Positions 33,647 through 62,920 of a stretch of 64,000 nucleotides of DNA are shown piece by piece. The position numbers and the translations under genes are program-made. The stretch is taken from IMG/VR virus record IMGVR_UViG_3300035661_000001, positions 372,001 through 436,000 of that record. One strand, given 5' to 3'. Positions within the stretch are counted from its first letter, which is position 1; each line of letters starts with the position of its first letter. The notes beneath the pieces are model-generated. The model saw only the letters and a program-made list of their open reading frames with translations, was not told the DNA's origin and ran no database searches.

Positions 33647-33729
33647 TAATTTTAAATATCGATCCATTGACATGCCGATTCCATGTGTTATCTTTAGGTG
33701 AAGATTTTTATAAGATCCACCTAAAGATT

Positions 33730-34338
33730 ATGATTTTTAAAACTATTAAGGATTTAATTGAACATAAATCAAATTGCACAATTTGCAATTCACCATTGCA
33801 CGCTTTTCTCAAAGAAAAAGCTAGGAATAAAGAAAGTATTCCCCAAAAAAGAATATGTTTAATTAATTCTAAATTCAAAAACCAACAATTTGAATTTAAA
33901 TTAGATTATTGTAGACATAATCTGGATATCCATTATCAAGCCATTCTTAATGATTCTAATCTATTAATTCTGGACCCACCTATTTTAGAAGAAAATGAAG
34001 TGGAATATGCTTTATCATTCCTAACAGATCTGTTTCTTAATATTGAATTACACTGTCTCAATAAAGAATGTAAACATAATTTTTATACCTTTACCTCAAT
34101 ATTAAAACCAAAATATAATTCAGATATTGGAGTATTTTTTCTTCCATTCTTTTTAGATTGGGAATGTTTTAACTTGAAACATTTATGGATTCAAAATGAT
34201 AACGTATCCCAATTAACAAAAATTTATAATACTAACTCTATTACAACACTTCCAATTACTATGCCTTTATTGCAAATAAGTTCCGATAACAAAGAAAAGA
34301 TATTCAACAGAATTAAAACTATTGTAAATTTTAGATAA
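33730..34338 (+). CDS. CxxC paralog family member 1
   Basis: CTIC..PL; ends RIKTIVNFR. Confidence 0.6.
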   Translation: MIFKTIKDLIEHKSNCTICNSPLHAFLKEKARNKESIPQKRICLINSKFKNQQFEFKLDYCRHNLDIHYQAILNDSNLLILDPPILEENEVEYALSFLTDLFLNIELHCLNKECKHNFYTFTSILKPKYNSDIGVFFLPFFLDWECFNLKHLWIQNDNVSQLTKIYNTNSITTLPITMPLLQISSDNKEKIFNRIKTIVNFR

Positions 34339-34342
34339 TAAT

Positions 34343-35041
34343 ATGTTAAAAGAATTTTTAAATTTTAATACTCATTGCCCATCTTGTAAAAACCCCCTTA
34401 CTTTATTCATGAGATGGTCCGGAGATATCATTGATAATGATTATCGTTTATTCAGGTTTCATCACAAACCAAATGAAAATATCGCATTTCGAGAAATTAA
34501 ACAAGATAATAAATATCCACAAAACTCTAAACACTCATTAGGTATAAACGGAATTATTTATCCAAATACTAATTCAATCACTTTCAATACTACCTCTGCA
34601 GAAAAGATAATTCAAAACCAAGATTCTATCTATTTCTTTTTTATATGTAATCCCAGCTCCATTGAATATCTTTCTAATGATTATGAAATCAATGTTTACG
34701 ATTCTTGTTATTTTAGATCATCTTTTCCAGTAAAATTTGTAAAAAATGATAATCGTCTATGTCCGACATATATAGAACCACCAGGTAATCATATAGCTAA
34801 TGAGCATTTTACTATCCTAGATAAAAAAGAAAATTCAGAAAAAGTATATGTTTTAACTGTATCTCATGAAGATAACAAAACATATTTAATGTATTACTCA
34901 GTTGACAACGAACAGACTTCAGACGAAGCTTTTACACCAAAAGTTTTTACCAAAGAACTTCCATTACTGAAAACTAGCCCTGACCCATCCGACAAAGACA
35001 AGTTACTGGAACGAATGAATTCCTGGATAATCATGAGTTGA
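34343..35041 (+). CDS. CxxC paralog family member 2
   Basis: CPSCKNPL; ends LPLL...RMNSWIIMS. Confidence 0.6.
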   Translation: MLKEFLNFNTHCPSCKNPLTLFMRWSGDIIDNDYRLFRFHHKPNENIAFREIKQDNKYPQNSKHSLGINGIIYPNTNSITFNTTSAEKIIQNQDSIYFFFICNPSSIEYLSNDYEINVYDSCYFRSSFPVKFVKNDNRLCPTYIEPPGNHIANEHFTILDKKENSEKVYVLTVSHEDNKTYLMYYSVDNEQTSDEAFTPKVFTKELPLLKTSPDPSDKDKLLERMNSWIIMS

Positions 35042-35193
35042 TTATACGCATTAGGCGCCGAAGTTGCAGACTTTTCTTTCTTAGGTAATGGCGTCAGAAA
35101 CTATGTAGAAGCTGTTTGGATTCATTTTAGAGAAGAATTAGACAGAAGAAAAATAGATACAGAATTTTTCTGTGATCTAGAAATATAAATTTT

Positions 35194-36282
35194 ATGAATA
35201 TCCCGCAAATAATCGCCTCAAGCGATGATAAACTTTCATCGCTTTTTAATATGATTCCTATTCATATTCATGAAAATAGGGTAAAAGAAATAGATCATCA
35301 GGTCAGTTCCCCGGAACTCTGGAGAAATCCACAAAAAGCCGCCGTTCTTATGAAAGAAAGACAAAAACTTTCAGAACTAATATCTTTCTTATCAACCGCC
35401 AAATCTAAATTGGAATTCTATAAAGAATGTTTATCTTCCATTCCAGATGAATTAATAGGAATAGAAGACCAAATAATGAGTTTATACTCCGCTATCTCCA
35501 ACTTGGAGTTTAAACAAATGTTATCCGATCCACTCGACGATTCTCCAGCAATAATTTCTATCAACGCTGGCGCTGGAGGATTAGAAGCCGCTAATTGGAC
35601 TACCATGCTTTTTAGAATGTATTCCAGATATGCCGCCGCTAATGACTTAAAAATAGAACTCCTTGACATGAAACCCTCAGAAGAACACTCTTCTATCTGT
35701 ACAGACTCCGTCTCTATTCGTATCGAAGGTCCCTATGCTTATGGCTTTCTTAAATCAGAAATAGGCGTTCATCGATTAATTCGTAACTCTCCATTTAACG
35801 CTAATGATGCCAGACATACCTCATTCGCCGCCGTGACTGTTCTCCCAGATATAGAAGATCAAATAGATATTCAAATAAATGAAAAGGATATCGAAATTAC
35901 TACAATGCGATCCTCTGGCGCTGGTGGACAAAATGTTAATAAAGTAGAGTCAGCTGTTAGATTAAAACATATTCCAACCGGTCTAGTTATCAATTCTAGA
36001 TCAGAACGAGACCAACATACCAATAGAAAAATTGCTCTCAAAATTTTAAAAGCTAAACTTTATGAATTAGAAGTGAATAAGAAAAATGCCGAAAAAGAGA
36101 AGTTCTTCAACTCTATGCAGGATAACTCCTTCGGACATCAAATAAGGTCATATATTCTATTCCCATCCCAAATGGTAAAAGATCATCGCTCCGAATATGA
36201 AACTAAATCTGCTACACAAGTTCTAGATGGCGATTTAACTCCATTTATTAACGCTTTTCTACATTCAAATGTTAACCGTTAA
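35194..36282 (+). CDS. prfB: Peptide chain release factor 2
   Basis: GAGG.EA..W..ML.RMY, SPF specificity tripeptide, [26 protein letters not shown]; no internal frameshift. Confidence 0.93.
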
Positions 36283-36838
36283 AGATTTCATTGGATACAA
36301 CAATCCATGCTTCTTCTGCAAAACACCAATAGATCTGAAGATTAGATCTACTAATGCATCAAATGATCGATCTATCTCTATCAAACCGGACCTATCATCG
36401 GAAATATTAGATCTTGCTTTAAAAGTTACCTATGTGGGCACTCTTAATTTAAAAATAAATCACACCCACAACAGATTTAATTCAAATAATTTTAAAGACT
36501 TGACAGCATATTTAAAAGATTATAAGCTCTCTATGAGCCTTCGCTGCAATAAATGTGGCACTACCATAAAAAGCAAAAATTTACAATTTGATCTAGTTAA
36601 CCAAATTATCAAACCACTAGAAATATCTAGCGAAGTTCTCAACGTTATAGGTAAAGGTACTTTTTATTCTTTAGTCTCCAATTTCCAAAAGAATATATCT
36701 ATCCTGTCCGCAACTCCTATGCAACTAGGTAAAAATAATTATACCACTATACTAGATCTCCCACTGCAACCACTATCAAAATTCGATAGTCCAGAACATT
36801 TCATAAAGAAAATGAAAACCCTTCTTCTATTTATATGA
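36269..36838 (+). CDS. CxxC paralog family member 3
   Basis: CFFCKTP; ends KMKTLLLFI. Confidence 0.6.
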
Positions 36839-37176
36839 TATACGAAAATTGCCCAATCTGTTCAAAAACATTATCAAAACAATCAGAAACTTTAAACCCA
36901 GGTTTAATAAGCTGCGAGTCATTCTGCGAAAAAGAAAAAGACCACTCCTTCTTCTCAAGATGGTTTAATGAAGAACCCAATCAAACGCAAATAATTAAAA
37001 TTGCTTTCAAAGGTGACTCCAAAATATTTTTGAAACTCAATTACCAATTACAAAAAAGTTTTATCTGGACAAAACCAAATGACGTACATCCCATTAAAGT
37101 ATCATTGTTTGAACCAGATTTCTCTGATATCCCAAAACTTAAAAAGAAACTCAAAACCCTTCTTCTATTCATATAA
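36835..37176 (+). CDS. CxxC paralog family member 4
   Basis: CPIC; ends PDFSDIPKLKKKLKTLLLFI. Confidence 0.65.
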   Translation: MIYENCPICSKTLSKQSETLNPGLISCESFCEKEKDHSFFSRWFNEEPNQTQIIKIAFKGDSKIFLKLNYQLQKSFIWTKPNDVHPIKVSLFEPDFSDIPKLKKKLKTLLLFI

Positions 37177-37178
37177 AT

Positions 37179-37532
37179 ATGAAAATCCCATCCGATTGCC
37201 CTATCTGTCATCAATTCCTGTTAAATAAATACATACAAGATGCCAACCAAATCGATGTCCTAAAGAAGAAATGCTTCCGCTCTCCCACCCATAATATAGA
37301 ATATACCTCCCTCCCAAATCAGGACGATTCCCTTAAATCTATCACTCTCACCACCTTCAATAAACTAGAAATCTCCCATTTCAAATGGGACTTCCAATTA
37401 AAAGAATTCACAATCCGTTTCCCCAAAGGAAACTTTACCCAAGAGATAAAACATCTCCCATTCTTTATTCCCAATTTATCTAATCTCCCAACCCTAATAT
37501 CAAAAATTAAGAAATACTTAATTTTCTCATGA
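37179..37532 (+). CDS. CxxC paralog family member 5
   Basis: CPIC; ends PNLSNLPTLISKIKKYLIFS. Confidence 0.65.
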   Translation: MKIPSDCPICHQFLLNKYIQDANQIDVLKKKCFRSPTHNIEYTSLPNQDDSLKSITLTTFNKLEISHFKWDFQLKEFTIRFPKGNFTQEIKHLPFFIPNLSNLPTLISKIKKYLIFS

Positions 37533-37545
37533 CATATGATAATGC

Positions 37546-37875
37546 ATGAAGCTACCCAAATTTTGCCCAATCTGTAATAATAGATTAAAAAAAGATGTCA
37601 ACCCACAAATAAACTCTAGCAAAATCTGCTGCGCTAAATCCCCAGGACACTATCTCGGATACCTATTTGACGAAAAATCTCAGCTCACTCACGTCTTCCT
37701 TACCCTAGACAATTACTCAAGCATCGAACTACGAACAATCCATAACGAAACAATCTTCTATTATAACCCCAAATCTAACCTGGATTTTCTCGTCATACCC
37801 AAACTCCTAATTCCCGATTTCCCATCCCTCAGTAAACTAAAACAAAAACTATCCATCCTAAGGGTGTTTATCTAA
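37546..37875 (+). CDS. CxxC paralog family member 6
   Basis: CPIC; ends PDFPSLSKLKQKLSILRVFI. Confidence 0.65.
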   Translation: MKLPKFCPICNNRLKKDVNPQINSSKICCAKSPGHYLGYLFDEKSQLTHVFLTLDNYSSIELRTIHNETIFYYNPKSNLDFLVIPKLLIPDFPSLSKLKQKLSILRVFI

Positions 37876-37898
37876 CCCACCCATCAAGAGGTCTACCC

Positions 37899-38264
37899 TT
37901 GAATTGCCCCTCCCTAAATTGCCCGTTCTGTAACAATCCACTGCAATTTAAACTCGATAATTATAAATTTGTAAGACAAAACTACTCCCAACCATATTCC
38001 TGTACAAAATGTCCAGGAAAACCTACCTTCGCCCTACTCTTCCAACAAGATAAAATCCCCCAAGCTATTGATATCTTCCTGCCCGCCAAATATAAAAAAC
38101 AACGCTATTATATTCACCAAAATTATATAGCCAAATCTACCACCATCTTAAAAAATAACTACCCCAAATCTATCATCATAACCTCTCTCCCTATCCTAGA
38201 TATCTCCCCTAATACATCCCAACATACCCTATATAGAATTCTAAGCAACAAAGCCTTCCTATGA
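37899..38264 (+). CDS. CxxC paralog family member 7
   Basis: CPFC..PL, CTKC; ends RILSNKAFL. Confidence 0.6.
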   Translation: MNCPSLNCPFCNNPLQFKLDNYKFVRQNYSQPYSCTKCPGKPTFALLFQQDKIPQAIDIFLPAKYKKQRYYIHQNYIAKSTTILKNNYPKSIIITSLPILDISPNTSQHTLYRILSNKAFL

Positions 38265-38615
38265 CTCCAAATTGCATTTTTTTTGCTCTTCTATCCTAGA
38301 AATTACCGAATTATCAAAAAACTCTTCCGTTGCACATTGCCCCCAATGTATGAAAATAGAAGAATATTATATTTCTTATTACCTAGAAACTAATAAAAAA
38401 ATTGACACATGCATGGTTTATCACTCAGACAAAAGTATAAAATACTCTGTCGCCCTAGACCTAAAACTATACACTATCATCATCACTACCTGGGAAGCAA
38501 ATGCCCTAGTCGATGCTATCTATTTCCCCTCCCACTATTCAATTCCCTATTCCACCTAATGGAAATCGCCGGACAATTTGCCCAGCGATTCAATAAAATT
38601 AAAGCTTTCCTTTAA
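38261..38615 (+). pseudogene. CxxC paralog family member 8, split by two frameshifts
   Basis: ATG 38261 MTPNCIF, a T8 run, then frame 38272 CSSILE..CPQC, then frame 38409 ending RFNKIKAFL. Confidence 0.5.
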
Positions 38616-39337
38616 TTCATTATTCCCTCACCTCTCAAAAACTCCTGGATCTTATCCACATGTACAAAAAATACATGCCCAGGGGCATCTCTCATCAGAA
38701 AACTACAAATCCCCACCAATCTGCCCTCCATATCAAATACCCCACCACCACTGTTCCCATGCCAGCCACTCACGTCAACCGCCAAAAACTTATCTCCATC
38801 TTCTATCATATCCTCCCTTATACCAGCTACCATACCCTCTAAATAATTATACAACATACCTCCAGTATGCCCCATAACTATCACCTTCTCCCCAACTCCT
38901 ACCCCATTTCCTATCTTAACCCCTTGCCCAACTCCCGATCCATCTATTGCTAACACTAACGCCAAATCAGTATCCTCAGATACCGCACTCACTATCCCCC
39001 ACCTAGCCGGACTTAAACTAATCCCCATCTTAGATATATTTACCTCACTCCTTATCTTAAATCTAATCAATGATCCAGCTTTAGCCTCATCTTCCTCATC
39101 CGTTACACAATGACGAGCCGTTATAAACCTGTCCTTGTCTATCCAAACTCCACCACAAATCATCCTCCATCCATCCTTGCTCTCTTTCACTATCAACAAT
39201 GTCTCCATCTGTAACTCAGGTATCTTATCCATCCCTCCTTCATGCTTGATTTTCACTTCCCCCCCACGGCAACAACTTACCAGCCCTATCACCATCAGAA
39301 CTAACACCATTATCCGAAACCATAATACGTTCCTCAT
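38612..39337 (-). CDS. Trypsin-like serine protease with signal/lipoprotein N-terminus
   Basis: TARHC, DLAL, GNSGG catalytic triad; hydrophobic N-terminus ending LVSCC. Confidence 0.88.
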   Translation of the reverse strand: MRNVLWFRIMVLVLMVIGLVSCCRGGEVKIKHEGGMDKIPELQMETLLIVKESKDGWRMICGGVWIDKDRFITARHCVTDEEDEAKAGSLIRFKIRSEVNISKMGISLSPARWGIVSAVSEDTDLALVLAIDGSGVGQGVKIGNGVGVGEKVIVMGHTGGMLYNYLEGMVAGIREDMIEDGDKFLAVDVSGWHGNSGGGVFDMEGRLVGICSFLMRDAPGHVFFVHVDKIQEFLRGEGIMN

Positions 39338-39590
39338 GATCTTATCCCGTTCTCTCCACCGCTCCCTATCAATTATATGTATTTATCAACTTATTAAAGT
39401 TTTAATTCAATTGCCCTATACATAATTTTAATAGATACTTTCAAAAATCCTTATTAGTAGTTTTTTTCATTTTGTTTGTTTTAATTCAAATTAACCGTTT
39501 TGAATTCGATATTTTCCATTTTAGGTCATATATTTGGTATTTTTTATTCTCTTTTAGTTACATTTAATTCTTCCTACCCCCTTTTGGGAG

Positions 39591-39605
39591 GCAAACCCCG
39601 TGCCA
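39591..39605 (-). promoter_or_regulatory. Lone sigma54 -24/-12 element at the composition boundary
   Basis: Reverse strand reads TTGGCACGGGGTTTGC (GG-N10-GC). Confidence 0.6.
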
Positions 39606-40095
39606 ACACCTGACCCATCCCAGCCTTTTCCCGCCACCCCCATTGCCCATCAGTTGTTCCATCCCATCCCAAACAAAGGTCATACAATAGATTTATTAAT
39701 CTATTCTTTCCGTTGACACTGTTTATTCTTTTCTTTTCCCATCCTATCAATGATTTTCTTTTCTATCTTCTTTTAGTACAGCCCATCCGTCAAACATCCC
39801 AAATCATACCATGATCACCATCCTCATCACGTTTTTCGGTGTTACCACCACGGAAACGGTGCCCGATCAGCCCATCCAGCGCCGTCGTGCTGCTGATCTG
39901 CTGATGAAGGTAGCTCTCGCGGACGGCAAAGGCGCCGGGCACCGCGACGGATGCGATCCCATCACGGTCGGTTGAGCTATCATGGCGCGACTCCTCGATA
40001 GGATGCTGGGTTACTGGAGCAAGCTGGATGACTGGAGCACTAAGGTAGAGACCTACCTGCTCTACACCCATCGCAAGTTCTGATCGGAGAAAGTC

Positions 40096-40449
<354 letters not shown>

Positions 40450-40670
40450 ATGGTTCCAGTCGAGACCCATCCTCTTACGTAGTGGGTGAATGTCATGCTC
40501 GCAATCTACAACGCTCGCGCCTTCCTTGTCGCGAACCTCACAACCTCACGTGGTTGGGACGGCTGGAATCCTCGGGGCGGACCCTGATAATCCACATCGA
40601 TTACACCATCAACGGAAAGCGGGCGACCTTCACCGACTACCGCTTCGAGCTGGTCAGCAAGTAGTGTACC

Positions 40671-40711
40671 AAGGGCGGAGCCTCCGGGCTGCCGCCCTTT
40701 CACTTTTCTTT
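40671..40711 (+). terminator. Intrinsic terminator
   Basis: AAGGGCGGAGCC-TCCG-GGCTGCCGCCCTT plus T-rich tail; covaries with the 41629 copy. Confidence 0.8.
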
Positions 40712-40720
40712 CCCGGTAGT

Positions 40721-40810
40721 GGCACGCCGATTGCAATATACACTTCCTGTGCCAATCAAGATAGCATCATAGGTTATGGCATTAGGTTTGCATTAAGCAA
40801 GTTGCTTGCC
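40721..40810. promoter_or_regulatory. Two head-to-head sigma54 -24/-12 pairs
   Basis: TGGCACGCCGATTGC..GTGCC (40721-40753) and TGGCATTAGGTTTGC..GCAAGTTGCTTGCC (40778-40810). Confidence 0.8.
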
Positions 40811-40869
40811 ATGCTCTGCTGGTCCCCAGCGAGCTCGATCCCATCCTCCCCTAGTGTTCTGCTATTAGC

Positions 40870-41151
40870 ATGAACACCCTGCAAAACATCCTCTCGACCC
40901 TCGCCGCTCTTCACACCGCGGATGCCGCAGTGACCGCGCTCCCCGTTGATGCTTCCGACGGTGAGGAAGATTCTCTCATGGCGGAATTCACCGCCGCAGA
41001 AACTGCGCTGTGGCACATGGCTCCGGCGTGGTTCAAAGATGCCGCGAGCGTCGGCGGGCTTCATGGCACGGGTCTTGCCGGCGATCCGGTCTTCTGGGCT
41101 CTAGATGACGTGGCGGAGCTTTGCGCCATATTGGCAATCGCCGCGCTCTAG
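40870..41151 (+). CDS. Acidic hypothetical protein (paralog of 41365)
   Basis: MNTLQNILSTLAAL...ALW. Confidence 0.65.
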   Translation: MNTLQNILSTLAALHTADAAVTALPVDASDGEEDSLMAEFTAAETALWHMAPAWFKDAASVGGLHGTGLAGDPVFWALDDVAELCAILAIAAL

Positions 41152-41364
41152 CAACAAGCATGCCAAGGAGAGCTCGCTCGGGCTCTCCTTCCGGTTCGCA
41201 GTGCAAGACTGCTACGTCGTTGGTGACGAGATCGTGCTTGACGTCGAGCACCTTGTGGGCGGTGAATGGCGCCCGATCTTCATCTTCAGCGTCAAGGAAG
41301 CGGAGGAGCGAATCTTTACGCTGCCCATCTAGAGTCCCATCCTGTATTGGCTGACGGGTATGGC

Positions 41365-41622
41365 ATGAGCTACCTCGTCAAGCTGAATCAAGTTCTCGCG
41401 ACCCTCGCAGCCGTTGACTCTTCCGTCTTCACTGGAACGGAGGATGAGATGGCTCTGTGGGACGCGGTGATCGAAGCAATCATCGAAATCGTCCGCCTTG
41501 ATCCGACGGCGGCGAAGTTCACGGCTGGCATGGATCCTGCCGCCATCTGGCAATTCGCGCAGGAATCCGATTTTGATTCTTGGCGCGATGTCGCCGCCAG
41601 GATCGACGTATCAAGCAAGTAA
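41365..41622 (+). CDS. Acidic hypothetical protein (paralog of 40870)
   Basis: MSYLVKLNQVLATLAAV...ALW. Confidence 0.65.
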   Translation: MSYLVKLNQVLATLAAVDSSVFTGTEDEMALWDAVIEAIIEIVRLDPTAAKFTAGMDPAAIWQFAQESDFDSWRDVAARIDVSSK

Positions 41623-41628
41623 CGTGCC

Positions 41629-41660
41629 AAGGGTGGAGCCTCCGGGCTACCACCCTTTCG
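41629..41660 (+). terminator. Intrinsic terminator
   Basis: AAGGGTGGAGCC-TCCG-GGCTACCACCCTTT. Confidence 0.75.
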
Positions 41661-41677
41661 GTTTACCGTTCTACTGT

Positions 41678-41710
41678 GGTACGAGGTTTGCATAATGCAA
41701 TTAGCTAGCC
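41678..41710. promoter_or_regulatory. Head-to-head sigma54 pair
   Basis: GGTACGAGGTTTGC-ATAAT-GCAATTAGCTAGCC. Confidence 0.75.
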
Positions 41711-41769
41711 AACTCCGGAGTACAAGCTAGAGAGCTCGGTCCCATCCTCTAACAGATATCGGCAGTGAC

Positions 41770-42099
41770 ATGGCAACTCACCTGATGGTTCTCGGTAATC
41801 ACGAAGCTGTCAACGCGTCTCTCTTCAACCCCAACCGTTACAGTTTCCGGTGGAATGCGGATCACACGGCGTTCGAGCCCATCCTCGCCCGGTACTGGGA
41901 CGATGCCAGCTACATCGCGAAGCGCTCACGCGACACCGCCCCGGAATGGAAGAAGCCCATCGCCGAGCCGGATTTCCATGAGAGGAGCTGGCTCGCGTTC
42001 CAGGCTTTCATGCACGATCCCATCGATGATGTGCAGGAGCCCGAGTTCTTCCCGCGTGACGCGACGGAGACGATGCCTGCCGATCACATGTGGTTCTGA
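41770..42099 (+). CDS. Hypothetical protein
   Basis: 109 aa, high GC3. Confidence 0.65.
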   Translation: MATHLMVLGNHEAVNASLFNPNRYSFRWNADHTAFEPILARYWDDASYIAKRSRDTAPEWKKPIAEPDFHERSWLAFQAFMHDPIDDVQEPEFFPRDATETMPADHMWF

Positions 42100-42134
42100 G
42101 AGATTCCCATCCTTCCACGAGGAGAGCCTGAATC

Positions 42135-42311
42135 ATGCAAACGCCTTCCATCAAGCATCCCGAGAGCAACCACCTTTTCGCCCGGCGCGCCGCCGAGGAT
42201 CAGATCCTCGTCGCTGGAGCCGGCACCTTCGCCACCGTCGAGGATGGCAAGCTGTTCACCACACCAATCGCCGCTCCCGATCAGTTCGCGAAGTGGCGCC
42301 CGGTCCAGTGA
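42135..42311 (+). CDS. Small hypothetical protein (58 aa)
   Basis: GGAG RBS; manual translation MQTPSIKHPESNHLFARRAAEDQ... Confidence 0.55.
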   Translation: MQTPSIKHPESNHLFARRAAEDQILVAGAGTFATVEDGKLFTTPIAAPDQFAKWRPVQ

Positions 42312-42359
42312 GGGGAGGGAGAGGATCGCCTCTCCCCTTCTCTTTTGCCGTTCTGTCAT

Positions 42360-42463
42360 GGCACACTGTTTGCAAACTGCGAGAGTTATGCCATTCGCTA
42401 TTCCCGAATCGCGAATCACGGCTAGCCGTTGGCATGGGTTGTGCAATATGCAATGTCGAAGCC
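42360..42463. promoter_or_regulatory. Two head-to-head sigma54 pairs after a terminator hairpin (42310-42346)
   Basis: GGCACACTGTTTGC-AAACT-GCGAGAGTTATGCC (42360-42392); GGCATGGGTTGTGC-AATAT-GCAATGTCGAAGCC (42431-42463). Confidence 0.8.
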
Positions 42464-42749
42464 AAGCCCGGATCGGACCCTCCGGGCGCACTAAGAGGAG
42501 ACCGGCGACCCATCCTCTAACAGGATCCCCGAGGACTACCGGCAACGCTGCGAAAGCGAAGCTGGACTCGGGTGGAACGCTCCCCGGTCCCAAGCTGCAA
42601 GAGCAGGGTCCAAACGGTGCGGCACCGTCAACAACGCCGCGGCGATAGGGAATACCTACCGCACCCTAATCGGAGGAGAGAGAGACCCATCCCCGAAAGG
42701 GGTTCTCCAAAGGGGTCAGTCACTCTCCAACCAAAAAGGATTCACCGCC

Positions 42750-44081
42750 ATGAACTCCCTCACGTCGCTCTCTTCCGCCGTCGCTCTCCCCGATAACTCC
42801 GCGTTCTTCGCGGATCTCCTCTCCGATGATCCCGAGATTCGGGCGCTGCTGGACGCGGCGTATGGTAAGGGTAGCACCAAAGTGCCCGGCGTCACCGTGA
42901 CCCGCTCCGGTAGCCTCAACGCCCGTCCCCTCATCGGCGGGATCAAGCCCGGCGGACGCAAGTCCCGTGCCAACGGCGATAAGCCCGCTCGGGCTCCGAA
43001 GGCGGACAAGCCCGCCAAGGAAGCGAAGGTGGAGCCCATCCTCGTCGAGCTGACGTGGAAGTCCAACGGTTCGGGCGCTGCCCGCTTCCTGGAAGCTCTC
43101 TCAATGGCGGGGAAGCGGTTCCGCTGCTACGAGACGGATGGTGTTGACGTGGTTTCCGGCGAGTGTCACTCGGCGGGAGATCCCGTCCTCGCCTCCAACG
43201 GCGCCCCTCTCACGTACTTCGCTGGCGACATCGCCCAGCGGTCCGACGAGCGCGCCGCGATCGAAGCCTGCTTCGACGGCTCCTCGCGCTCCGAAGCGCT
43301 CGGGACGCAACTGGATCAAGCGCGCATGCTCGCCCAAACGGCGATACGGCGCGGCATGTCGGGCAAGGTCGAGCACCGCGCCTTTCACTACAGCGGGATC
43401 GACAATTCCCCGCGCACCGTGGTTCACGCGGTGTATCACACGGGCGTCGTCGCCTCGGCTCACCCCTGGCGTTCTCCGGATGCTCACTCGGCGATCTGGT
43501 CGGTCGAGGGTTACGTGAAGGGACTCCCCCGTCCCATCCAGAAGCTGCTCGGGGACATGTGTGCCCGTGAGCGTCTGGCGACCGACGAGGTGATCACGCT
43601 GGGCAAGCTCCGCGCCTTCGTGGTCGCGGAGGATCAGGAGAGCTTCGAGTCTCTCATGAACCGGGAGTACCCCTCGTCAAAGGAGATCGAGACCATCTTC
43701 GCCCTGGATGGCATCACGGTTCAGGACTACACGGTGGTCGAGAAGCTGCACCCGGTCGTGGTCGCTCTCAAGCGCGAGCGTGGCATGAGACTCCTCGACC
43801 GTCTCGCCAAGCTGGAAACGTTCGCGGCGATCCGTCTCGCTGAGGTTCAGCGCAAGATCGATGCCGTCGAGGGCGGCGATACCGCCAAGTCGATCGCCGA
43901 CATGTACGCCGAAGCGGACGCATGCGGATCGATCGCGACGCTGGAGGAAAGTATCCTGTCCTGCTACGATCCGCAGGCGCGCATGTACTACACCCTGCCC
44001 GTGGGCACGGTGATCCCCGCCGGTCCCATCGAGCGCCTCGCGGCGCACCTCGCCGAGCACAGCCTGGATCTCACGAAGTGA
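42750..44081 (+). CDS. Large hypothetical protein (443 aa) with basic N-terminal linker
   Basis: AAGGA RBS, strong GC3 bias, no recognisable family. Confidence 0.8.
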   Translation: MNSLTSLSSAVALPDNSAFFADLLSDDPEIRALLDAAYGKGSTKVPGVTVTRSGSLNARPLIGGIKPGGRKSRANGDKPARAPKADKPAKEAKVEPILVELTWKSNGSGAARFLEALSMAGKRFRCYETDGVDVVSGECHSAGDPVLASNGAPLTYFAGDIAQRSDERAAIEACFDGSSRSEALGTQLDQARMLAQTAIRRGMSGKVEHRAFHYSGIDNSPRTVVHAVYHTGVVASAHPWRSPDAHSAIWSVEGYVKGLPRPIQKLLGDMCARERLATDEVITLGKLRAFVVAEDQESFESLMNREYPSSKEIETIFALDGITVQDYTVVEKLHPVVVALKRERGMRLLDRLAKLETFAAIRLAEVQRKIDAVEGGDTAKSIADMYAEADACGSIATLEESILSCYDPQARMYYTLPVGTVIPAGPIERLAAHLAEHSLDLTK

Positions 44082-44691
44082 TCCCGCCGGGGAGGGTTCG
44101 CCCTCCCCATTCTCACCCGGACGGATAGGCGAGCGCCTATCCGTCCCCTCCCTGGGATCGATCCCATCGGAGAGGAGAGAGGCGGCTCACAAGCGCTGGC
44201 GGGCGGGCGTGAGTATCTTAACGCGCACGTCTCTCTTCTCTCCGCTGCGACCCATCCTTGGAGCACAGCACCGGCTAACCCATCCTCATTCACACGTGGA
44301 GAAGGTCATGCAACATCTCATCATCGGGTTTCTCATGGGCGGCGCCATCCTGGCGATCGAGCAGGCGGACCGGCAGATCGTCCCGATTCTCACCGGCGTC
44401 CCCATCACTTCCGAGACGCGCTGGATCAGCGCGGACGCCTACAACCGGGCGGGCGAGTTCCTCTCCGAGTGCGAAAGCCGCACCGGCTGCTTCACCTCCT
44501 GATCCCATCCCCAGCTACGTCGAGGTTCCTCATGAATGATCGAATGGGTACGTACGTCACCACGGTCGTGGGCGGACGCCTGTGCATCAACGACGGGGTC
44601 GGCTGGCATCCCATCAGCGCCGCCTGGCTCGCCCAGCACGGCTGCTTGTTCCGCAAGCGGTAACCAATCCCATCCTCTGAGGAGACTCCAC

Positions 44692-45009
44692 ATGTGGAGA
44701 GACGATGAGATCAACAGGCTGGATCATCCAGCCCCCGACGGATATGTCCGCGTGGCTGCGGAAGATCCTCCCATCGACAAGGATGACGACTACGCTCTCA
44801 TCATCTGCCACGTCGTTTCCTGGCTCGGGAAAGGTTTCATGCCGGCGGTTCGATACTTCGATCGCTCCGGCACCTTTCGTCCCTGCCACAACGGCGACGC
44901 CCATCGCGGAGAGGATCGAGCTGCCTATGACTCCGCTGTCACGGAAGGGCGCAAGATCCTCGCCGACATGCAAGCGCTCACGAAGTCCCACACGTCTCCC
45001 ATCTCCTGA
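44692..45009 (+). CDS. Hypothetical protein
   Basis: GAGGAG RBS, MWRDDEIN... Confidence 0.6.
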   Translation: MWRDDEINRLDHPAPDGYVRVAAEDPPIDKDDDYALIICHVVSWLGKGFMPAVRYFDRSGTFRPCHNGDAHRGEDRAAYDSAVTEGRKILADMQALTKSHTSPIS

Positions 45010-45016
45010 GGACGCC

Positions 45017-45250
45017 ATGAACCAGAACAGCAAGACCGCGCCCGTTCGCAACGCCACCCACGACGAGGCTCTTCTCGCCGACGAGGCGAAGTATGCCCCC
45101 GGCGGACGTGTCCCCGCCCATCTCCAGGTCGACGACTACGAACCCGCGGGCTTCACTCGCATCACTCGTGCTCGCCCGAGCAAGCGCGCCCAGAGCGCGG
45201 AGCGCGAGCGGTTCGACACGCGCCGGCAGCCGCGCGAAGGCAAGTACTGA
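45017..45250 (+). CDS. Hypothetical protein
   Basis: GAGG RBS, MNQNSK...; stop followed by TCCCATC. Confidence 0.6.
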   Translation: MNQNSKTAPVRNATHDEALLADEAKYAPGGRVPAHLQVDDYEPAGFTRITRARPSKRAQSAERERFDTRRQPREGKY

Positions 45251-45403
45251 TCCCATCGGGGATGTAGGTCTCGGGTTGGTAAGGCTGGATCATAGGCACT
45301 TCGGTGCCCCCGCACCAATCTTTGCTCTCTCTATAGGAGAGGGGTAAGAAAGGTTTTGAACGGCGGTTGAGTCCAGCGCTCGAAACTGAACGCATGTTTC
45401 TGC

Positions 45404-45481
45404 GGGGTCTTCCCATCGATGGTTAGAGTCCTGCCGTCAAACGTAGGATGGTGCGGGTTCGACTCCCGCAAGACTCCACCA
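45404..45481 (+). tRNA. Atypical/degenerate tRNA-like element (8-bp acceptor stem, G3:U70, encoded CCA)
   Basis: GGGGTCTT/AAGACTCC-A-CCA; T-arm GCGGG-TTCGACT-CCCGC; anticodon arm TCCTGC-CGTCAAAC-GTAGGA; 5' side of the D-stem is CCCATC. Confidence 0.6.
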
Positions 45482-45621
45482 AGAAGATCACGTGAAGTAT
45501 CTTCGTACATCCCATCAACGACGACGCGACCGCGGAGTCAAGGCTCGACACCGCGAACCGGGGATGCGTTGGAACCGTCGCAAGGACAATCCTTCACCAA
45601 AGCCCGCCACGGCTACGCCTG

Positions 45622-46068
45622 ATGTTCAGGAACACACCTAAATCCCATCTCACCAACCTTCGGCACGAGGTCATGATGAATCAGATCAGCGAAAAGGCGA
45701 AAGCGTTCAAGGCGGCAATGGTGGCGAAGCGAGCCAAGGAGAAGCTCCAGACCGCCCATCGAGATGAGCAGCACGCCAAGCGTACCGAGGCGGGTTACGT
45801 CGACACCGCGCAGAGCGAGCGCGCCGACGACTTCGACTGCGCCCGAGCCTGGGACGCCATGGAGGCGTCCGCGGAGAAGACCTCCCATCGACACTCCGCG
45901 AAGCACGAGGCGCAGGTCGCCCGTCTCGCCGCCGCGCAGCAGGCACGGGTCGCCCGCGGGGAAGCGGACCCCGAGCCCATCCCGGTCAACGACCGCAGCC
46001 ACAACGAGCCCTTCCCGGTCGTGGAGTACAGCCCGGTCCGCGTCGCGCCGGATTTCGACGAAGAGTGA
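45622..46068 (+). CDS. Hypothetical helical protein
   Basis: High GC3; start may be 45673 (GAGG RBS). Confidence 0.65.
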   Translation: MFRNTPKSHLTNLRHEVMMNQISEKAKAFKAAMVAKRAKEKLQTAHRDEQHAKRTEAGYVDTAQSERADDFDCARAWDAMEASAEKTSHRHSAKHEAQVARLAAAQQARVARGEADPEPIPVNDRSHNEPFPVVEYSPVRVAPDFDEE

Positions 46069-46123
46069 TCACCTGCCCCGGCGCCGAAAGGTTCCGGGGC
46101 TTCGCTCTTTTCTTTTCTGTCTT

Positions 46124-46197
46124 GGCACGGGCTTTGCAATATACACTTCTCATGCCAACCCAATGGCACATCTTTTGCAATCTGCAATGTCCGGTCC
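46124..46197. promoter_or_regulatory. Two head-to-head sigma54 pairs after a terminator (46075-46120)
   Basis: GGCACGGGCTTTGC-AATAT-ACACTTCTCATGCC (46124-46156); GGCACATCTTTTGC-AATCT-GCAATGTCCGGTCC (46165-46197). Confidence 0.8.
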
Positions 46198-46239
46198 AAA
46201 CCCCGGAGCACCCATCCTCTAGAAGCCCCCGGCTAACCC

Positions 46240-46701
46240 ATGCACTACGCAATCGAGATCGTCGGTTCTTTCCTGGGTGTTGCCATTCCCGCGTGGTTGC
46301 GCGTGTTCGACTGCCGCAAGCCCATCGGGGAGGAGTTCTCCGCCAAGGCACCCTGGACGTATACCTACGAAGGCAAAACGTTCAGCCCGGCTTTGCTCGG
46401 CTCCGAAACCGCCGCGGTGGATCTCGGATTGCGAACCGAGAAGGAGAACAACGCAAGCTGCCCATCCTCCGGCTCGGGTTACGGCGACACTCGGACCAAT
46501 GAGTCGGAAGCCCATCTGGCAGTGACTCGCATGATCGAGAGCGCCATCCAGCATCACGAGAAGTGGCTCTGGGCAAACGCTCAACCCAAGTCGACCGATG
46601 GCGGCGGGTGCTACTACCAGCCCATCGCGGTCGCCCTCTGCAACTTCGGCTGGTCGGTCATCGCTGACGGTCGGCACTACGTCGTCCCCCAGTACGTCTA
46701 A
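46240..46701 (+). CDS. Hypothetical protein
   Basis: 153 aa, high GC3, TAA-CCCATC end. Confidence 0.6.
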   Translation: MHYAIEIVGSFLGVAIPAWLRVFDCRKPIGEEFSAKAPWTYTYEGKTFSPALLGSETAAVDLGLRTEKENNASCPSSGSGYGDTRTNESEAHLAVTRMIESAIQHHEKWLWANAQPKSTDGGGCYYQPIAVALCNFGWSVIADGRHYVVPQYV

Positions 46702-46730
46702 CCCATCTCAATCTTCAGAAGAGGTACGTC

Positions 46731-47174
46731 ATGCAAGTCATTCTGATGAGTGGTATCCCGGGAAGCGGTAAAGCGACCCTCGCCAAGGAATTGGGTGGTC
46801 CCCTGACCGTTGTCTGTTCTGCCGACGATTACTTCGTCGATCCCATCGAGGGCGCGTACAACTTCGATCCATCCAAGTTGTCGGAAGCGCACGGCGACTG
46901 CATGCGCAAGTTCGTTTCCCATCTGCTCCTCGACGAGGCGGATACCATCATCGTCGACAACACCAATCTGACGGCACTGGAGCTTGCTCCGTACGTCGCC
47001 GTGGCGGCAGCCCATCATGCCAGCGTGGAGATCGTTACCGTTAACTGCAACGTGGATGTTGCGGTGGAACGGAACACCCACAATGTTCCCATCGGTTCCA
47101 TCCGTCGGATGGCAAGGACGCTCCTCGACCGGGCGCTCCCGCCTTACTGGAACGTCATTCAGACGGTGCGCTGA
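46731..47174 (+). CDS. AAA_33 / polynucleotide-kinase-like P-loop protein
   Basis: GIPGSGKAT, SADDYF, IIVDNTN, RNTHNVP. Confidence 0.85.
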   Translation: MQVILMSGIPGSGKATLAKELGGPLTVVCSADDYFVDPIEGAYNFDPSKLSEAHGDCMRKFVSHLLLDEADTIIVDNTNLTALELAPYVAVAAAHHASVEIVTVNCNVDVAVERNTHNVPIGSIRRMARTLLDRALPPYWNVIQTVR

Positions 47175-47191
47175 CCCATCCGAGAGGTGTC

Positions 47192-47401
47192 ATGAAGTTC
47201 ATCGACTGCAATAGTCCGGGCTGCATCTTCGTCGGAGAACAGGTTCACTGTGACGGTCTCTCCTACCTGGGAGGTCATCCCTGTCCCATCTCCGACGAGC
47301 TGGCAACCAAGCTGATGACGGACCCGGGCGACGAGGAAGGTCCCTGGACTCTCCAGCCGGCGCCGGCGTTCTGGGCTGACAACAACGGCAAGCCTGACTG
47401 A
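47192..47401 (+). CDS. Small Cys-rich hypothetical protein
   Basis: GAGG RBS; TGA-CCCATC end. Confidence 0.55.
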   Translation: MKFIDCNSPGCIFVGEQVHCDGLSYLGGHPCPISDELATKLMTDPGDEEGPWTLQPAPAFWADNNGKPD

Positions 47402-47419
47402 CCCATCTGAGGAGCACAC

Positions 47420-47614
47420 ATGATCGTTAAGGTAACGTTCAGCATTTCCGGGAACGGTCAAAACGGAATGGGATGTGTTCCCGAGCCTGGGAAGTTCGAC
47501 ACCGATCCCATCACCTGGGCGATCGGTTTGGAATACTTCTCCGCTTCCGAAGCGCTCGTGTGCTGGGATCCGTTCCAGGACGGTTCCCTCTACTGGAAGC
47601 CCAAGGGCGACTGA
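47420..47614 (+). CDS. Small hypothetical protein
   Basis: GAGGAG RBS; TGA-CCCATC end. Confidence 0.55.
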   Translation: MIVKVTFSISGNGQNGMGCVPEPGKFDTDPITWAIGLEYFSASEALVCWDPFQDGSLYWKPKGD

Positions 47615-47643
47615 CCCATCTTCTACCTTCCACGGTGATCGTC

Positions 47644-47913
47644 ATGAATCGTAAACCTAGGACGAACGGACCGAACCTGCACATGTGCAATCCTTTGGCG
47701 GTGCCTACCCCATCGAAAAGTTACATGTTCGGCGTGGAGATCACCGATCAGAACCAAGCCGAGCTGTACGATGCCTATCGGTCGGGACAGTCTATCGGGG
47801 ATGCGTTCTGGTTCGCCGAATGCATGTACGATAAAAAAGAGCGTCTTGCTCTGATCGACCGTCGCGTCGCCGGGGGCATGTCGTTCCACCCATCCTCTCA
47901 CTCACTACGGTGA
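47644..47913 (+). CDS. Hypothetical protein
   Basis: MNRKPRT... high GC3. Confidence 0.5.
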   Translation: MNRKPRTNGPNLHMCNPLAVPTPSKSYMFGVEITDQNQAELYDAYRSGQSIGDAFWFAECMYDKKERLALIDRRVAGGMSFHPSSHSLR

Positions 47914-48443
47914 TGATCATGATGATCGACTGCAAGTGTTCGGGCAACGTGGCGTGTTCCGGTTGCAAAGCGGCGGCAGCGCAGGAGCCCCGAGCGGAAC
48001 GCCAGGCGCCTCCCGCTCCCGAGACCCATCGTCCCTGCACTCGCTGCAAAGGCGAGGGAACGATTCCCGATATCTTGAACAAGTCCAAGATGCGCGACTG
48101 CCTCTCGTGCGGCGGGACCGGCGAGTTCGCACCCATCAACCTGGATGATCTCCTGAATCGCATCCGGGCGAGCCAGGGCAAGAACAAGGGTCGGCTCCGC
48201 GCCAGCATGACGTCTCCCATCCGCAAGGACGGGATGAATGCGGCGCGAGCCTACTACGTCTGGCGCATGGCGCGCTTCCACGGCGGGCAGGATACCACCA
48301 TGCCCATCACGGCTTCGTACTGCGTCCACGGTGATCCCTTCACCGACAAGCTCGACGCCATCGCGGATCACATCGCCAAGCAAGCCTTCGGCACGGATCT
48401 TGCCGGGGTCGCTCGCTGGGCTCGTGCCTTCGGGATGGTGTGA
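47910..48443 (+). CDS. Protein with DnaJ-type CxxCxGxG zinc finger
   Basis: CTRCKGEG and CLSCGGTG; TGA-CCCATC end. Confidence 0.65.
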   Translation: MMIMMIDCKCSGNVACSGCKAAAAQEPRAERQAPPAPETHRPCTRCKGEGTIPDILNKSKMRDCLSCGGTGEFAPINLDDLLNRIRASQGKNKGRLRASMTSPIRKDGMNAARAYYVWRMARFHGGQDTTMPITASYCVHGDPFTDKLDAIADHIAKQAFGTDLAGVARWARAFGMV

Positions 48444-48472
48444 CCCATCCGTTAACCGAAGTCGAGGTTGCT

Positions 48473-48721
48473 ATGACGGATACACAACGGGCTCTTCGTG
48501 AGGCATTCTTCAAGCAGGAGGAGCGGCTCGCCCATCTGGTGGATGACAAGCCGGAGAACCCTTCCAATCTGGAGAAGGCAGCTTTCTGTGAAGCCATGTT
48601 CGATTTCCGTGCGGCGTGGTTGCATGCCGTCGGCTTCCGGGACGGTCTGCAAAAGGCGTGCCAGCTTGCGGGGATCCAGGGTTTCGAGGAAGCGGTCCCA
48701 TCCACTACTCCGGCGGGGTGA
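48473..48721 (+). CDS. Hypothetical protein
   Basis: GAGG RBS, MTDTQRALRE... Confidence 0.55.
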   Translation: MTDTQRALREAFFKQEERLAHLVDDKPENPSNLEKAAFCEAMFDFRAAWLHAVGFRDGLQKACQLAGIQGFEEAVPSTTPAG

Positions 48722-48725
48722 GGAT

Positions 48726-62875: not shown

Positions 62876-62920
<45 letters not shown>

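What the first reader, a model, noticed from the sequence alone, without database searches (positions are those of the whole stretch)
35200..39400. Progressive, gene-direction-independent G depletion and C enrichment on + approaching the junction
Seen: from about 35 kb the + strand becomes increasingly C-rich and G-poor (1 G in 38161-38220, 2 G in 38881-38940). This holds in + strand genes and across the - strand protease gene, so it is not codon bias tied to transcription direction. Known: a strand left single-stranded accumulates C>T and A>G changes. Inference: the - strand is exposed as ssDNA near this locus (strand-displacement replication or a terminus), or this is a diffuse form of the C-rich CCCATC signal.
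Basis: partly seen in the sequence, partly recalled or inferred. Interest (0 to 1): 0.6.

Follow-up and report, generated by a model that had tools for sequence, protein, structure and literature searches.

The report
Strand-specific mutation gradient beside phage junction
In a 452-kb uncultivated phage, the last ~6 kb before an abrupt AT-rich to GC-rich junction carries a real, genome-unique, strand-fixed composition gradient (T to C and G to A on the + strand) that recurs in most related phages examined and looks like the footprint of one DNA strand being repeatedly left single-stranded next to a fixed start site.

Summary
The window is part of a 451,956-bp IMG/VR phage genome that assembles as a circle. 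From about 33.7 kb to 39.3 kb, the third-codon-position GC skew of the + strand falls from -0.2 to -0.8. The genome background is +0.10 +/- 0.19. The strongest skew lies next to a junction (J, about 39.58 kb) where GC content jumps from 32% to 60%.

- **Uniqueness:** the zone is the only one of its kind in the genome.
- **Strand-fixed:** + strand genes and the - strand protease have the same four-fold-site composition in + strand terms.
- **Transition-type:** C/(C+T) falls linearly from 0.62 to 0.21 over 7 kb (r = -0.99), and G/(G+A) is halved.
- **Junction is real:** contigs from three independent runs span it.
- **Recurrence:** a similar zone lies left of the equivalent junction (or, where the junction was not fetched, downstream of RF2) in most related huge phages. 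In one of them every zone gene is on the + strand.
- **Motif:** the zone is not a diffuse CCCATC array.

Best reading: a mutational gradient like that of mitochondrial DNA, caused by recurrent single-strandedness of the - strand. The displacement would come from synthesis that starts at J and runs leftward. J is origin-like. The mechanism is inferred, not shown.

The parts
33667..39337 (.). Skew zone. The + strand becomes progressively C-rich and G-poor towards the junction. The core is 36800-39337, with skew -0.54 overall and -0.7 to -0.8 at third codon positions.
35194..36282 (+). Peptide chain release factor 2 gene (PCRF and RF-1 domains), inside the outer part of the zone. Its third-position skew is -0.42, against -0.11 to +0.35 in six orthologues.
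36269..38559 (+). Tandem array of six small paralogous genes (95-189 aa, N-terminal CxxC). They match no Pfam family (two of the six tested). Third-position skew runs from -0.45 to -0.83. Positions 1 and 2 are also driven C-rich (-0.18 to -0.49, background +0.15 +/- 0.09).
38612..39337 (-). Trypsin-like serine protease gene on the opposite strand, with an N-terminal hydrophobic segment ending LVSC (read by eye, no predictor run). His, Asp and Ser motifs are recognisable by eye in the translation. Its coding strand is G-rich (four-fold G 0.40, C 0.03), which is the same + strand composition as its + strand neighbours.
39338..39574 (.). AT-rich, T-rich spacer between the protease start and the junction element (29% GC). 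Relatives have an AT-rich spacer here, with iteron-like direct repeats in three of them.
39575..39629 (+). Junction element J, about 55 nt, conserved with relatives G001 and G002. It includes the palindrome GGCA-N7-TGCC (39590-39604) and the first CCCATC (39614). It marks the start of the GC-rich domain.
39614..64000 (+). GC-rich domain (55-65% GC) of small + strand genes with GC3 of 0.65-0.9. It carries CCCATC on the + strand every 80-140 bp, and the reverse complement is almost absent. It continues beyond the window, and GC content and motif density decay over more than 100 kb.

Best explanation
The zone is a mutational footprint, not a coding or motif signal. Over the 2-7 kb to the left of a fixed site (J, window about 39.58 kb), the - strand is repeatedly left single-stranded. 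While exposed it accumulates A>G and C>T changes, which read as T>C and G>A on the + strand.

Exposure is longest next to J and falls to nothing about 6.5-7 kb away. This is the geometry of strand-displacement synthesis. A polymerase starts at J and moves leftward, copying the + strand and displacing the - strand. The displaced strand is filled back only later. That is a D-loop or a short-lived leftward fork, as at the heavy-strand origin of vertebrate mitochondrial DNA. J is therefore most likely an origin-like initiation site of this phage clade, and bulk replication runs rightward, in the same direction as about 90% of the genes.

- **Shown:** the composition gradient, its strand-fixed and transition-type nature, its uniqueness in the genome, its recurrence beside the equivalent junction in most relatives examined, and the reality of the junction.
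- **Inferred:** that single-strandedness is the cause, that DNA synthesis rather than transcription does the displacing, and that J is an origin.
For: 1. **Strand-fixed.** + genes and the - strand protease share one + strand four-fold composition: A .33/.30, C .44/.40, G .04/.03, T .19/.27 (chi2 p 0.59).
2. **Transition-type.** C is gained from T while A stays at .35 to .33 in + genes. In RF2 synonymous differences against the three AT-rich relatives, T>C:C>T is 77:32 and G>A:A>G is 40:18, while A>C:C>A is 20:19.
3. **Linear gradient anchored at J.** C/(C+T) falls from 0.62 to 0.21 over 0-7 kb (r -0.99). G/(G+A) is already low (0.10-0.20) and changes much less (r 0.80). [quoted passage not shown] A>G gradients have been used to infer D-loop replication in chloroplasts (PMC2695485).
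4. **Protein composition follows.** Skew at codon positions 1 and 2 (+ strand terms) is -0.18 to -0.49 in the + genes of the array and -0.62 in the protease. Background is +0.15 +/- 0.09 for + genes and -0.07 +/- 0.14 for - genes. The protease's His, Asp and Ser motifs are still recognisable by eye.
5. **Positional, not gene-specific.** The orthologue of the 37179 gene is unskewed in G002, where the zone is only about 2.3 kb long.
6. **Recurrent.** Left of the equivalent GC jump, the zone is seen in G002, G003, G005, G006, G007 and L060. L050, L054 and L055 show the same negative skew 5-10 kb downstream of RF2, but their junctions lie beyond the fetched loci. G002's genome-wide skew minimum also lies just left of its J. 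In L060 the zone (third-position skew down to -0.94, about 6.5 kb) consists only of + strand genes, with no leftward coding unit.
7. **Origin-like sign change.** Skew goes from negative to neutral or positive across J in G003, G005, G006, G007 and L060. Iteron-like direct repeats sit in the AT-rich spacer at J in L060, G007 and G006.
8. **The junction is real.** Contigs from three runs in three studies span 36500-40218/40227 with no differences.
Against: - No direct evidence of single-stranded DNA, of replication initiation or of molecule ends. Only assembled contigs, not reads, could be laid.
- There is no DnaA-box cluster (17 matches, 17.1 expected). This genome has no iterons at J. The conserved element has no significant fold (z -0.05).
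- G001 has the junction, the conserved element and the CCCATC array but no skew zone. The process is therefore not an obligatory consequence of J, unless G001 recently lost the zone.
- In G005 and G007 the gene nearest J is less skewed (third-position skew -0.12 to -0.14) than genes 1-4 kb further left. The gradient is not monotonic everywhere.
- In this genome the skew stays mildly negative (-0.14 to -0.19 at third positions) for 8 kb to the right of J, so the sign switch is cleaner in relatives than here.
- Ordinary fork direction cannot give this size of effect. The replication-linked component elsewhere in the genome is only about +0.07 (my estimate), so prolonged or repeated exposure has to be assumed.
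Confidence: 0.45

Rival explanations
1. Transcription or R-loop version of the same exposure. A leftward promoter at J drives RNA that is G-rich and C-poor. This RNA forms stable R-loops on the C-rich + template, so the - strand is exposed as the non-template strand. The skew would then reinforce itself and could also prime DNA synthesis.
For: - Most relatives with a zone have 1-4 genes on the - strand (including the protease) directly left of J, which are transcribed leftward.
- G001 has no such genes and no zone.
- C3+ runs on the + strand (G clusters in a leftward RNA) reach 28 per kb in the zone, against about 4 per kb outside it.
- The sign is right for non-template-strand deamination.
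Against: - L060 has one of the strongest zones with only + strand genes for 9 kb left of J and no protease. A non-coding leftward transcript would be needed there.
- The skew extends 2-5 kb beyond the - strand genes into convergently transcribed + genes.
- In G005 and G007 the - strand gene nearest J is the least skewed.
- No sigma-70-like leftward promoter was found at J, and there are no G-quadruplex motifs.
Confidence: 0.2
2. End processing rather than an origin. J is a fixed nick, a packaging start or the left physical end of the genome. The - strand left of J is exposed either by 3'-to-5' gap expansion from a + strand nick, or because invading left ends prime leftward recombination-dependent synthesis across J.
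For: - J is the start of a domain of small unknown + strand genes, which is typical of a first-expressed end.
- A strand-polar motif array begins exactly at J and decays with distance. Its orientation would suit a Chi-like signal read from a left end.
- The contig on the GC-rich side has 1.5-1.7 times the mean depth of the AT-rich side in three runs. This would fit a terminal repeat, but the tool warns that contig depth must not be ranked, and GC bias explains it equally well.
Against: - No read-start data.
- Assemblies of this phage and its relatives do not break at J.
- Ordinary 5'-to-3' resection at an end left of J would expose the + strand, which gives the wrong sign.
- A two-rate model fitted to the left zone caps GC3 near 0.63 if both strands are exposed (my arithmetic). 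The GC3 of 0.8 right of J therefore needs another force.
Confidence: 0.15
3. Selection, not mutation. The + sense RNA is kept C-rich and G-poor as a large Rho-loading (rut-like) termination zone. This would stop genome-long rightward transcription from running into the early domain on circular or concatemeric templates.
For: - About 90% of genes are on the + strand and the zone sits at the very end of that array, just before J.
- The last 0.7 kb is antisense to the protease and so untranslated in + sense.
- C content there is 0.36 and G content 0.07.
Against: - The effect covers 2.5-6 kb of translated ORFs.
- It forms a smooth linear gradient.
- C is gained only from T and G is lost to A, with symmetric transversions. 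Selection for 'more C, less G' would also recruit transversions.
- Known rut sites are roughly 80-100 nt (from memory), not kilobases.
Confidence: 0.1
4. Artefact or foreign insert. The zone would be an assembly chimera, or a block of genes acquired from a donor with different composition.
For: IMG/VR labels three related records 'provirus', and composition changes abruptly at J.
Against: - Contigs from three independent runs cross J.
- The genome assembles as a circle, with GC content continuous across the contig ends.
- Gene order is conserved with relatives from at least 12 other samples.
- The bias is positional rather than gene-specific, and it has opposite coding-strand sense in + and - genes.
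Confidence: 0.02

Closest known systems
Asymmetric mutation gradient of vertebrate mitochondrial DNA (time spent single-stranded by the heavy strand during strand-displacement replication)
   Same: - One strand carries A>G and C>T excesses.
- The effect is seen at synonymous sites whatever the gene direction.
- It grows linearly towards the origin-proximal end (PMC9561281).
- From memory, the four-fold composition on the C-rich strand (A .33, C .44, G .04, T .19) is close to that of the human light strand.
   Different: - A 452-kb double-stranded DNA phage, not a 16-kb organelle genome.
- The gradient covers only 2-7 kb, about 1.5% of the genome, not a whole arc.
- No light-strand-origin equivalent was identified.
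- The replication mode is unknown.
Leading/lagging-strand GC skew at bacterial and phage replication origins (cumulative-skew minimum)
   Same: - The sign switches from C-rich to G-rich or neutral across J.
- The cumulative-skew minimum lies in the 415-420 kb block of the genome, 3-8 kb right of J.
- About 30% of huge phages are reported to show 'unidirectional' skew patterns (PMC7162821).
   Different: - The magnitude is about ten times larger (-0.6 to -0.8, against about 0.07 for the replication-linked component elsewhere).
- The extent is a few kb instead of a replichore.
- Most of the genome-wide + skew here is a coding-strand effect at codon positions 1 and 2.
- There are no DnaA boxes.
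GC-skewed R-loop regions (ColE1 and T4 origin primers, mitochondrial conserved sequence blocks, immunoglobulin switch regions)
   Same: A kilobase-scale region whose leftward transcript would be G-rich with dense G clusters, next to a candidate initiation site.
   Different: - No promoter, transcript or R-loop has been shown.
- One relative has the zone without any leftward gene.
Rho utilisation (rut) sites, the 'C greater than G bubble'
   Same: The + sense RNA is C-rich and G-poor.
   Different: - Kilobases rather than about 100 nt.
- Mostly inside translated ORFs.
- A transition-only, linear gradient.

Membership tests
mtDNA-type single-strand-exposure mutation gradient | Excess of A>G and C>T on one fixed strand at synonymous sites | tested here: met
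   On the + strand, four-fold T falls from .46 to .19, C rises from .11 to .44 and G falls from .08 to .04, while A is unchanged. RF2 synonymous differences give T>C:C>T 77:32 and G>A:A>G 40:18, with transversions at 20:19.
mtDNA-type single-strand-exposure mutation gradient | Independent of gene orientation | tested here: met
   + genes and the - strand protease do not differ in + strand terms (p 0.59). In coding-strand terms p is 1e-17. L060 has + genes only, and G006 has four - strand genes in its zone.
mtDNA-type single-strand-exposure mutation gradient | Monotonic, roughly linear change with distance from the initiation site | tested here: met
   C/(C+T) has slope -0.072 per kb, r -0.99, over 0-7 kb. 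The gradient is less regular in G005, G007 and L060.
mtDNA-type single-strand-exposure mutation gradient | The strand is physically single-stranded during replication | not testable with these tools
   Only assembled contigs were available.
Replication origin (bacterial or phage theta type) | GC-skew sign switch at, or cumulative-skew minimum near, the site | tested here: met
   The switch is seen at J in G003, G005, G006, G007 and L060. In this genome the cumulative minimum falls in the 415-420 kb block, about 3-8 kb right of J.
Replication origin (bacterial or phage theta type) | DnaA boxes or iterons next to an AT-rich unwinding element | tested here: inconclusive
   An AT-rich spacer is present. 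DnaA boxes are not enriched. Iteron-like repeats occur at J in L060, G007 and G006 but not in this genome, G002 or G001.
Replication origin (bacterial or phage theta type) | Skew extends along a whole replichore | tested here: not met
   The negative skew ends 6-7 kb left of J. The broader negative block at 23-33 kb follows - strand genes.
Transcription-associated strand asymmetry of the resident genes | The sign follows each gene's own transcription direction | tested here: not met
   + strand genes are C-rich on their coding strand and the - strand gene is G-rich on its coding strand.
CCCATC polar motif array | Motif copies, exact or degenerate, enriched over composition | tested here: not met
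   4 exact copies against 2.9 +/- 1.6 expected. With up to one mismatch, 47 against 34.6 +/- 5.1. After masking these the skew is still -0.45.
Rho-dependent terminator (rut) region | Untranslated C-rich, G-poor RNA of about 80-100 nt | tested here: inconclusive
   The composition fits. Only 38.6-39.3 kb is untranslated in + sense, and the rest lies in ORFs. Rho dependence cannot be tested with these tools.

The most novel reading that the evidence does not exclude
A clade of roughly 350-480-kb uncultivated phages from mats and sediments has a fixed initiation site at the boundary between its AT-rich body and a GC-rich domain. At that site, leftward strand-displacement (D-loop-like) synthesis leaves a mitochondrial-style deamination gradient. 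As far as I know, this would be the first such kilobase-scale single-strand-exposure footprint described in a double-stranded DNA phage. It would let replication start sites be read directly from metagenomic sequence. It would also tie together the GC jump, the lineage-specific polar motif arrays and the skew zone as consequences of one site.
Probability: 0.35. Interest if true: 0.8.

Novelty: new variant of a known kind. Interest (0 to 1): 0.62.

Why it matters
Strand-asymmetric mutation gradients are the main sequence-only evidence for how mitochondrial and chloroplast genomes replicate. Finding a sharply localised and very strong one in huge phages gives a concrete, testable candidate for the replication or initiation site of a clade that cannot yet be grown.

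The bias is strong enough to reshape protein composition in the affected genes. It also marks the left edge of an unusual genome architecture: a 30-point GC jump, a GC decline over more than 100 kb, and strand-polar hexamer arrays. That architecture misleads provirus and host-boundary callers, since three relatives are labelled 'provirus'. It deserves study in its own right.

Tried and rejected
- **Whole-genome cumulative skew as proof of asymmetric replichores.** Rejected as stated. About 90% of genes are on the + strand and the genome-wide + skew is mostly a codon position 1 and 2 effect. The negative block at 23-33 kb follows - strand genes.
- **Alternative genetic codes for the ORF-poor GC-rich domain.** I compared ORF coverage with TAG, TGA or TAA read as sense. 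This gave no case for recoding. The domain is simply made of small + strand genes with normal GC1 > GC2 < GC3. No other code was used anywhere.
- **Rfam and tRNA scans of the window.** Nothing found.
- **Pfam and PHROGs on zone and GC-rich ORFs.** Only RF2, the protease and one AAA_33 kinase-like protein were named.
- **DnaA boxes.** At chance level.
- **G-quadruplex motifs.** None in the zone.
- **Fold of the conserved junction element.** Not significant.
- **Pattern search for the junction element in IMG/VR.** Two chance hits only.
- **Profile search with the conserved 443-aa GC-domain protein.** It found only the three genomes already known.
- **Literature searches for CCCATC in phages and for huge-phage skew.** Nothing specific was found.
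- **Contig depth ratio across J (1.5-1.7).** Noted but not used as evidence, because the tool says depth per contig must not be ranked and GC bias is an equal explanation.
- **A single exposure process explaining both flanks of J.** A two-rate fit to the left zone caps GC3 at about 0.63, below the 0.8 seen on the right. The GC-rich domain therefore needs another force.

Full report
**What the sequence is**

The window is bases 372001-436000 of a single 451,956-bp IMG/VR virus record. The record has terminal overlap, so it assembles as a circle, and CheckV rates it 100% complete. It is a huge phage:

- It has a large terminase at genome 272.7-274.6 kb, about 25% identical to Bacillus phage terminases. 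No GenBank phage is a close relative.
- The left part of the window encodes a DnaB-like helicase, ribonucleotide reductase and PhoH.
- It carries 41 tRNA genes and no rRNA.
- The sequence occurs in microbial-mat and sediment metagenomes.

**The observation**

The + strand GC skew falls from about -0.1 near 35 kb to between -0.4 and -0.77 at 37.0-39.8 kb. At about 39.6-39.9 kb the GC content jumps from 30-36% to 55-65%.

Every 1-kb window in the 452-kb genome with skew below -0.30 lies at window 36.25-40.0 kb. Elsewhere the mean is +0.099 and the sd 0.084.

I called genes by a simple longest-ORF rule and expressed third-position skew in + strand terms.

| Gene set | Third-position skew (+ strand terms) |
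|---|---|
| 304 background + genes | +0.10 +/- 0.19 |
| + genes from 33667 to 38559, in order | -0.22, -0.42, -0.42, -0.45, -0.54, -0.69, -0.75, -0.83, -0.77 |
| - strand protease 38612-39337 | -0.77 |

(All.)

The most negative run of eight consecutive genes in the genome is exactly 35194-39337 (-0.64). The 540 other runs give +0.07 +/- 0.09.

**Nature of the bias**

Four-fold degenerate sites, written on the + strand:

| Gene set | A | C | G | T |
|---|---|---|---|---|
| Background + genes | .35 | .11 | .08 | .46 |
| + genes at 37.1-39.4 kb | .33 | .44 | .04 | .19 |
| Protease (- strand gene) | .30 | .40 | .03 | .27 |

The two zone rows do not differ (p 0.59). In coding-strand terms they differ with p 1e-17. 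The bias therefore belongs to the DNA strand, not to transcription direction or codon choice.

The main change is T to C on the + strand, and the second is G to A. In RF2, I compared synonymous differences against the three AT-rich relatives. T>C:C>T is 77:32 and G>A:A>G is 40:18, while A>C:C>A is 20:19. The asymmetry is therefore transition-specific.

Third-position C/(C+T) falls linearly from 0.62 next to the junction to 0.21 at 6-7 kb (slope -0.072 per kb, r -0.99). G/(G+A) is already low at 0.10-0.20 across the zone and rises only weakly.

Codon positions 1 and 2 are dragged along. The protease is rich in Gly, Val and Met, and its His, Asp and Ser motifs are still recognisable by eye.

**Not an artefact and not the motif**

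Logan contigs from three runs in three studies cover 36500-40218/40227 without a single difference. They break only at a 48-bp tandem duplication and a GGTCTC microsatellite at 40.19-40.45 kb.

CCCATC is an extraordinary signal in its own right:

- It occurs 360 times on the + strand, and its reverse complement only 7 times.
- Density is 59-81 copies per 10 kb just right of the junction, evenly spaced at about 113 bp.
- Density decays over 230 kb, and there are no copies at all in the 170 kb upstream of the zone.

The skew zone is not built from this motif. There are 4 exact copies against 2.9 expected, and the skew is still -0.45 after masking all near-copies.

**Relatives**

RF2 searches recovered about 20 related loci from other samples. 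The gene order recurs in this form:

1. RF2
2. An array of small CxxC paralogues (up to at least 25 copies)
3. Usually 1-4 genes on the opposite strand, including the protease
4. An AT-rich spacer
5. An abrupt GC jump

The negative-skew zone varies across the clade.

| Zone | Relatives |
|---|---|
| Clear zone of 2-6.5 kb directly left of the GC jump, affecting genes of both orientations | G002, G003, G005, G006, G007, L060 |
| Similar negative skew 5-10 kb downstream of RF2, with the junction beyond the fetched locus | L050, L054, L055 |
| Weak | L047, L052, L058 |
| Absent | G001 |

The complete 446,541-bp genome G002 repeats the whole architecture. Its genome-wide skew minimum lies just left of its junction.

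L060 is the most informative. Its third-position skew reaches -0.94 over about 6.5 kb, and every gene there is on the + strand. A leftward coding unit is therefore not required.

The bias is positional. The orthologue of the 37179 gene is unskewed in G002, where the zone is shorter.

**The junction**

This genome, G002 and G001 share a roughly 55-nt element at the start of the GC-rich domain. It contains the palindrome GGCA-N7-TGCC and the first CCCATC. It has no significant fold.

L060, G007 and G006 instead carry iteron-like direct repeats in the AT-rich spacer. DnaA boxes are at chance level.

Across J the skew changes from C-rich to neutral or G-rich in most relatives. That is the origin-like direction. 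In this genome it stays mildly negative for 8 kb.

**Explanation**

Three properties point the same way. The bias is fixed to a strand. It is restricted to transitions. It rises linearly towards a fixed point. All three are what recurrent single-strandedness of the - strand would produce, by deamination of A and C on that strand.

The same logic explains the mitochondrial heavy-strand gradient, where exposure time is greatest next to the heavy-strand origin and falls linearly (PMC9561281). It has also been used to infer D-loop replication in chloroplasts (PMC2695485).

The geometry that exposes the - strand left of J is a polymerase that starts at J and moves leftward. I favour DNA synthesis, meaning a D-loop or a short-lived leftward fork, with bulk replication running rightward along with transcription. 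Two points support this choice: L060 lacks leftward genes, and the sign change is origin-like.

A leftward transcript with R-loops, end or nick processing at J, and selection for a Rho-loading zone remain as rivals. G001, which has the junction but no zone, is the main unexplained exception.

A simple two-rate fit to the left zone cannot reach the GC3 of 0.8 seen right of J. The GC-rich domain therefore needs its own explanation.

**Limits**

- No raw reads could be laid, only contigs, so molecule ends, nicks and single-stranded intermediates are untested.
- Gene calls are simple ORF calls. In GC-rich DNA they are approximate.
- Relatives are too diverged (55-71% RF2 identity) for a polarised spectrum.

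Noticed in passing
window 39614-64000 and on to genome 0-230 kb; G002 whole genome: CCCATC occurs 360 times on the + strand, and its reverse complement GATGGG only 7 times in 452 kb. Just right of the junction there are 59-81 copies per 10 kb, evenly spaced (mean about 113 bp, CV 0.35). Density then declines over 230 kb. There are no copies in the 170 kb before the zone. The motif falls in all three reading frames and between genes, so it is a DNA-level signal. G002 shows the same pattern.
   Followed up: partly
right of the junction in L016, L017, L018, L019, L060, L052: The polar motif differs between lineages: CCCATC(GC) in G007 and L052, ACCTACA in G005 and G006, CCATCGAT in G003, and TTCTCATCAT in L060. 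This suggests co-evolution with a sequence-specific protein (Chi-like, restriction-evasion, nicking or binding site). Its function is unknown.
   Followed up: partly
whole genome; window 39.8-64 kb: GC content jumps from 32% to 62% at the junction. It then declines through the contig ends to 32% about 130 kb further on. Third-position C/(C+T) and G/(G+A) are both about 0.75-0.87 near the junction and decay over roughly 140 kb. G002 shows the same pattern. IMG/VR labels three relatives 'provirus', possibly because of this jump.
   Followed up: partly
window 32999-38559 and L005/L007/L016: Tandem arrays of small paralogous genes with an N-terminal CxxC motif lie downstream of RF2. Most are about 95-140 aa. 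There are 6 or more copies here and at least 25 in some relatives. None of those tested has a Pfam match. In L004 the copies nearest the junction look decayed, with no ORF of 80 aa or more over about 2 kb.
   Followed up: partly
genome 80119-80195 (outside the window) and window 35194-36282: ARAGORN reports a tRNA with a CTA anticodon (it would read TAG) among the 41 tRNAs, and the phage encodes RF2. ORF coverage gave no case for recoding, and no other code was adopted.
   Followed up: partly
window 40096-40449: A hydrophobic 117-aa ORF contains a perfect 48-bp tandem duplication (40189-40284) and a GGTCTC microsatellite (40406-40447). Independent assemblies break here, and unrelated contigs share the microsatellite.
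   Followed up: no
window 36500-42400: The mean contig depth on the GC-rich side is 1.5-1.7 times that of the AT-rich side in three runs, and about 2 times in a fourth. This could be sequencing GC bias or a terminal repeat. The tool warns against ranking contig depths.
   Followed up: no
window 32358-32385: A perfect 10-bp-stem hairpin flanked by A and T runs sits between convergent genes and looks like a bidirectional intrinsic terminator. It lies close to the outer limit of the gradient and to a contig break in the public assemblies.
   Followed up: no
L060 13613-13734; L018 13604-13685; L017 8612-8885: Iteron-like direct repeats lie in the AT-rich spacer at the junction of three relatives: four copies of about 16 nt spaced 28-33 bp apart, three to five copies of 24 nt, and three copies of 46 nt. 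This genome has none.
   Followed up: partly
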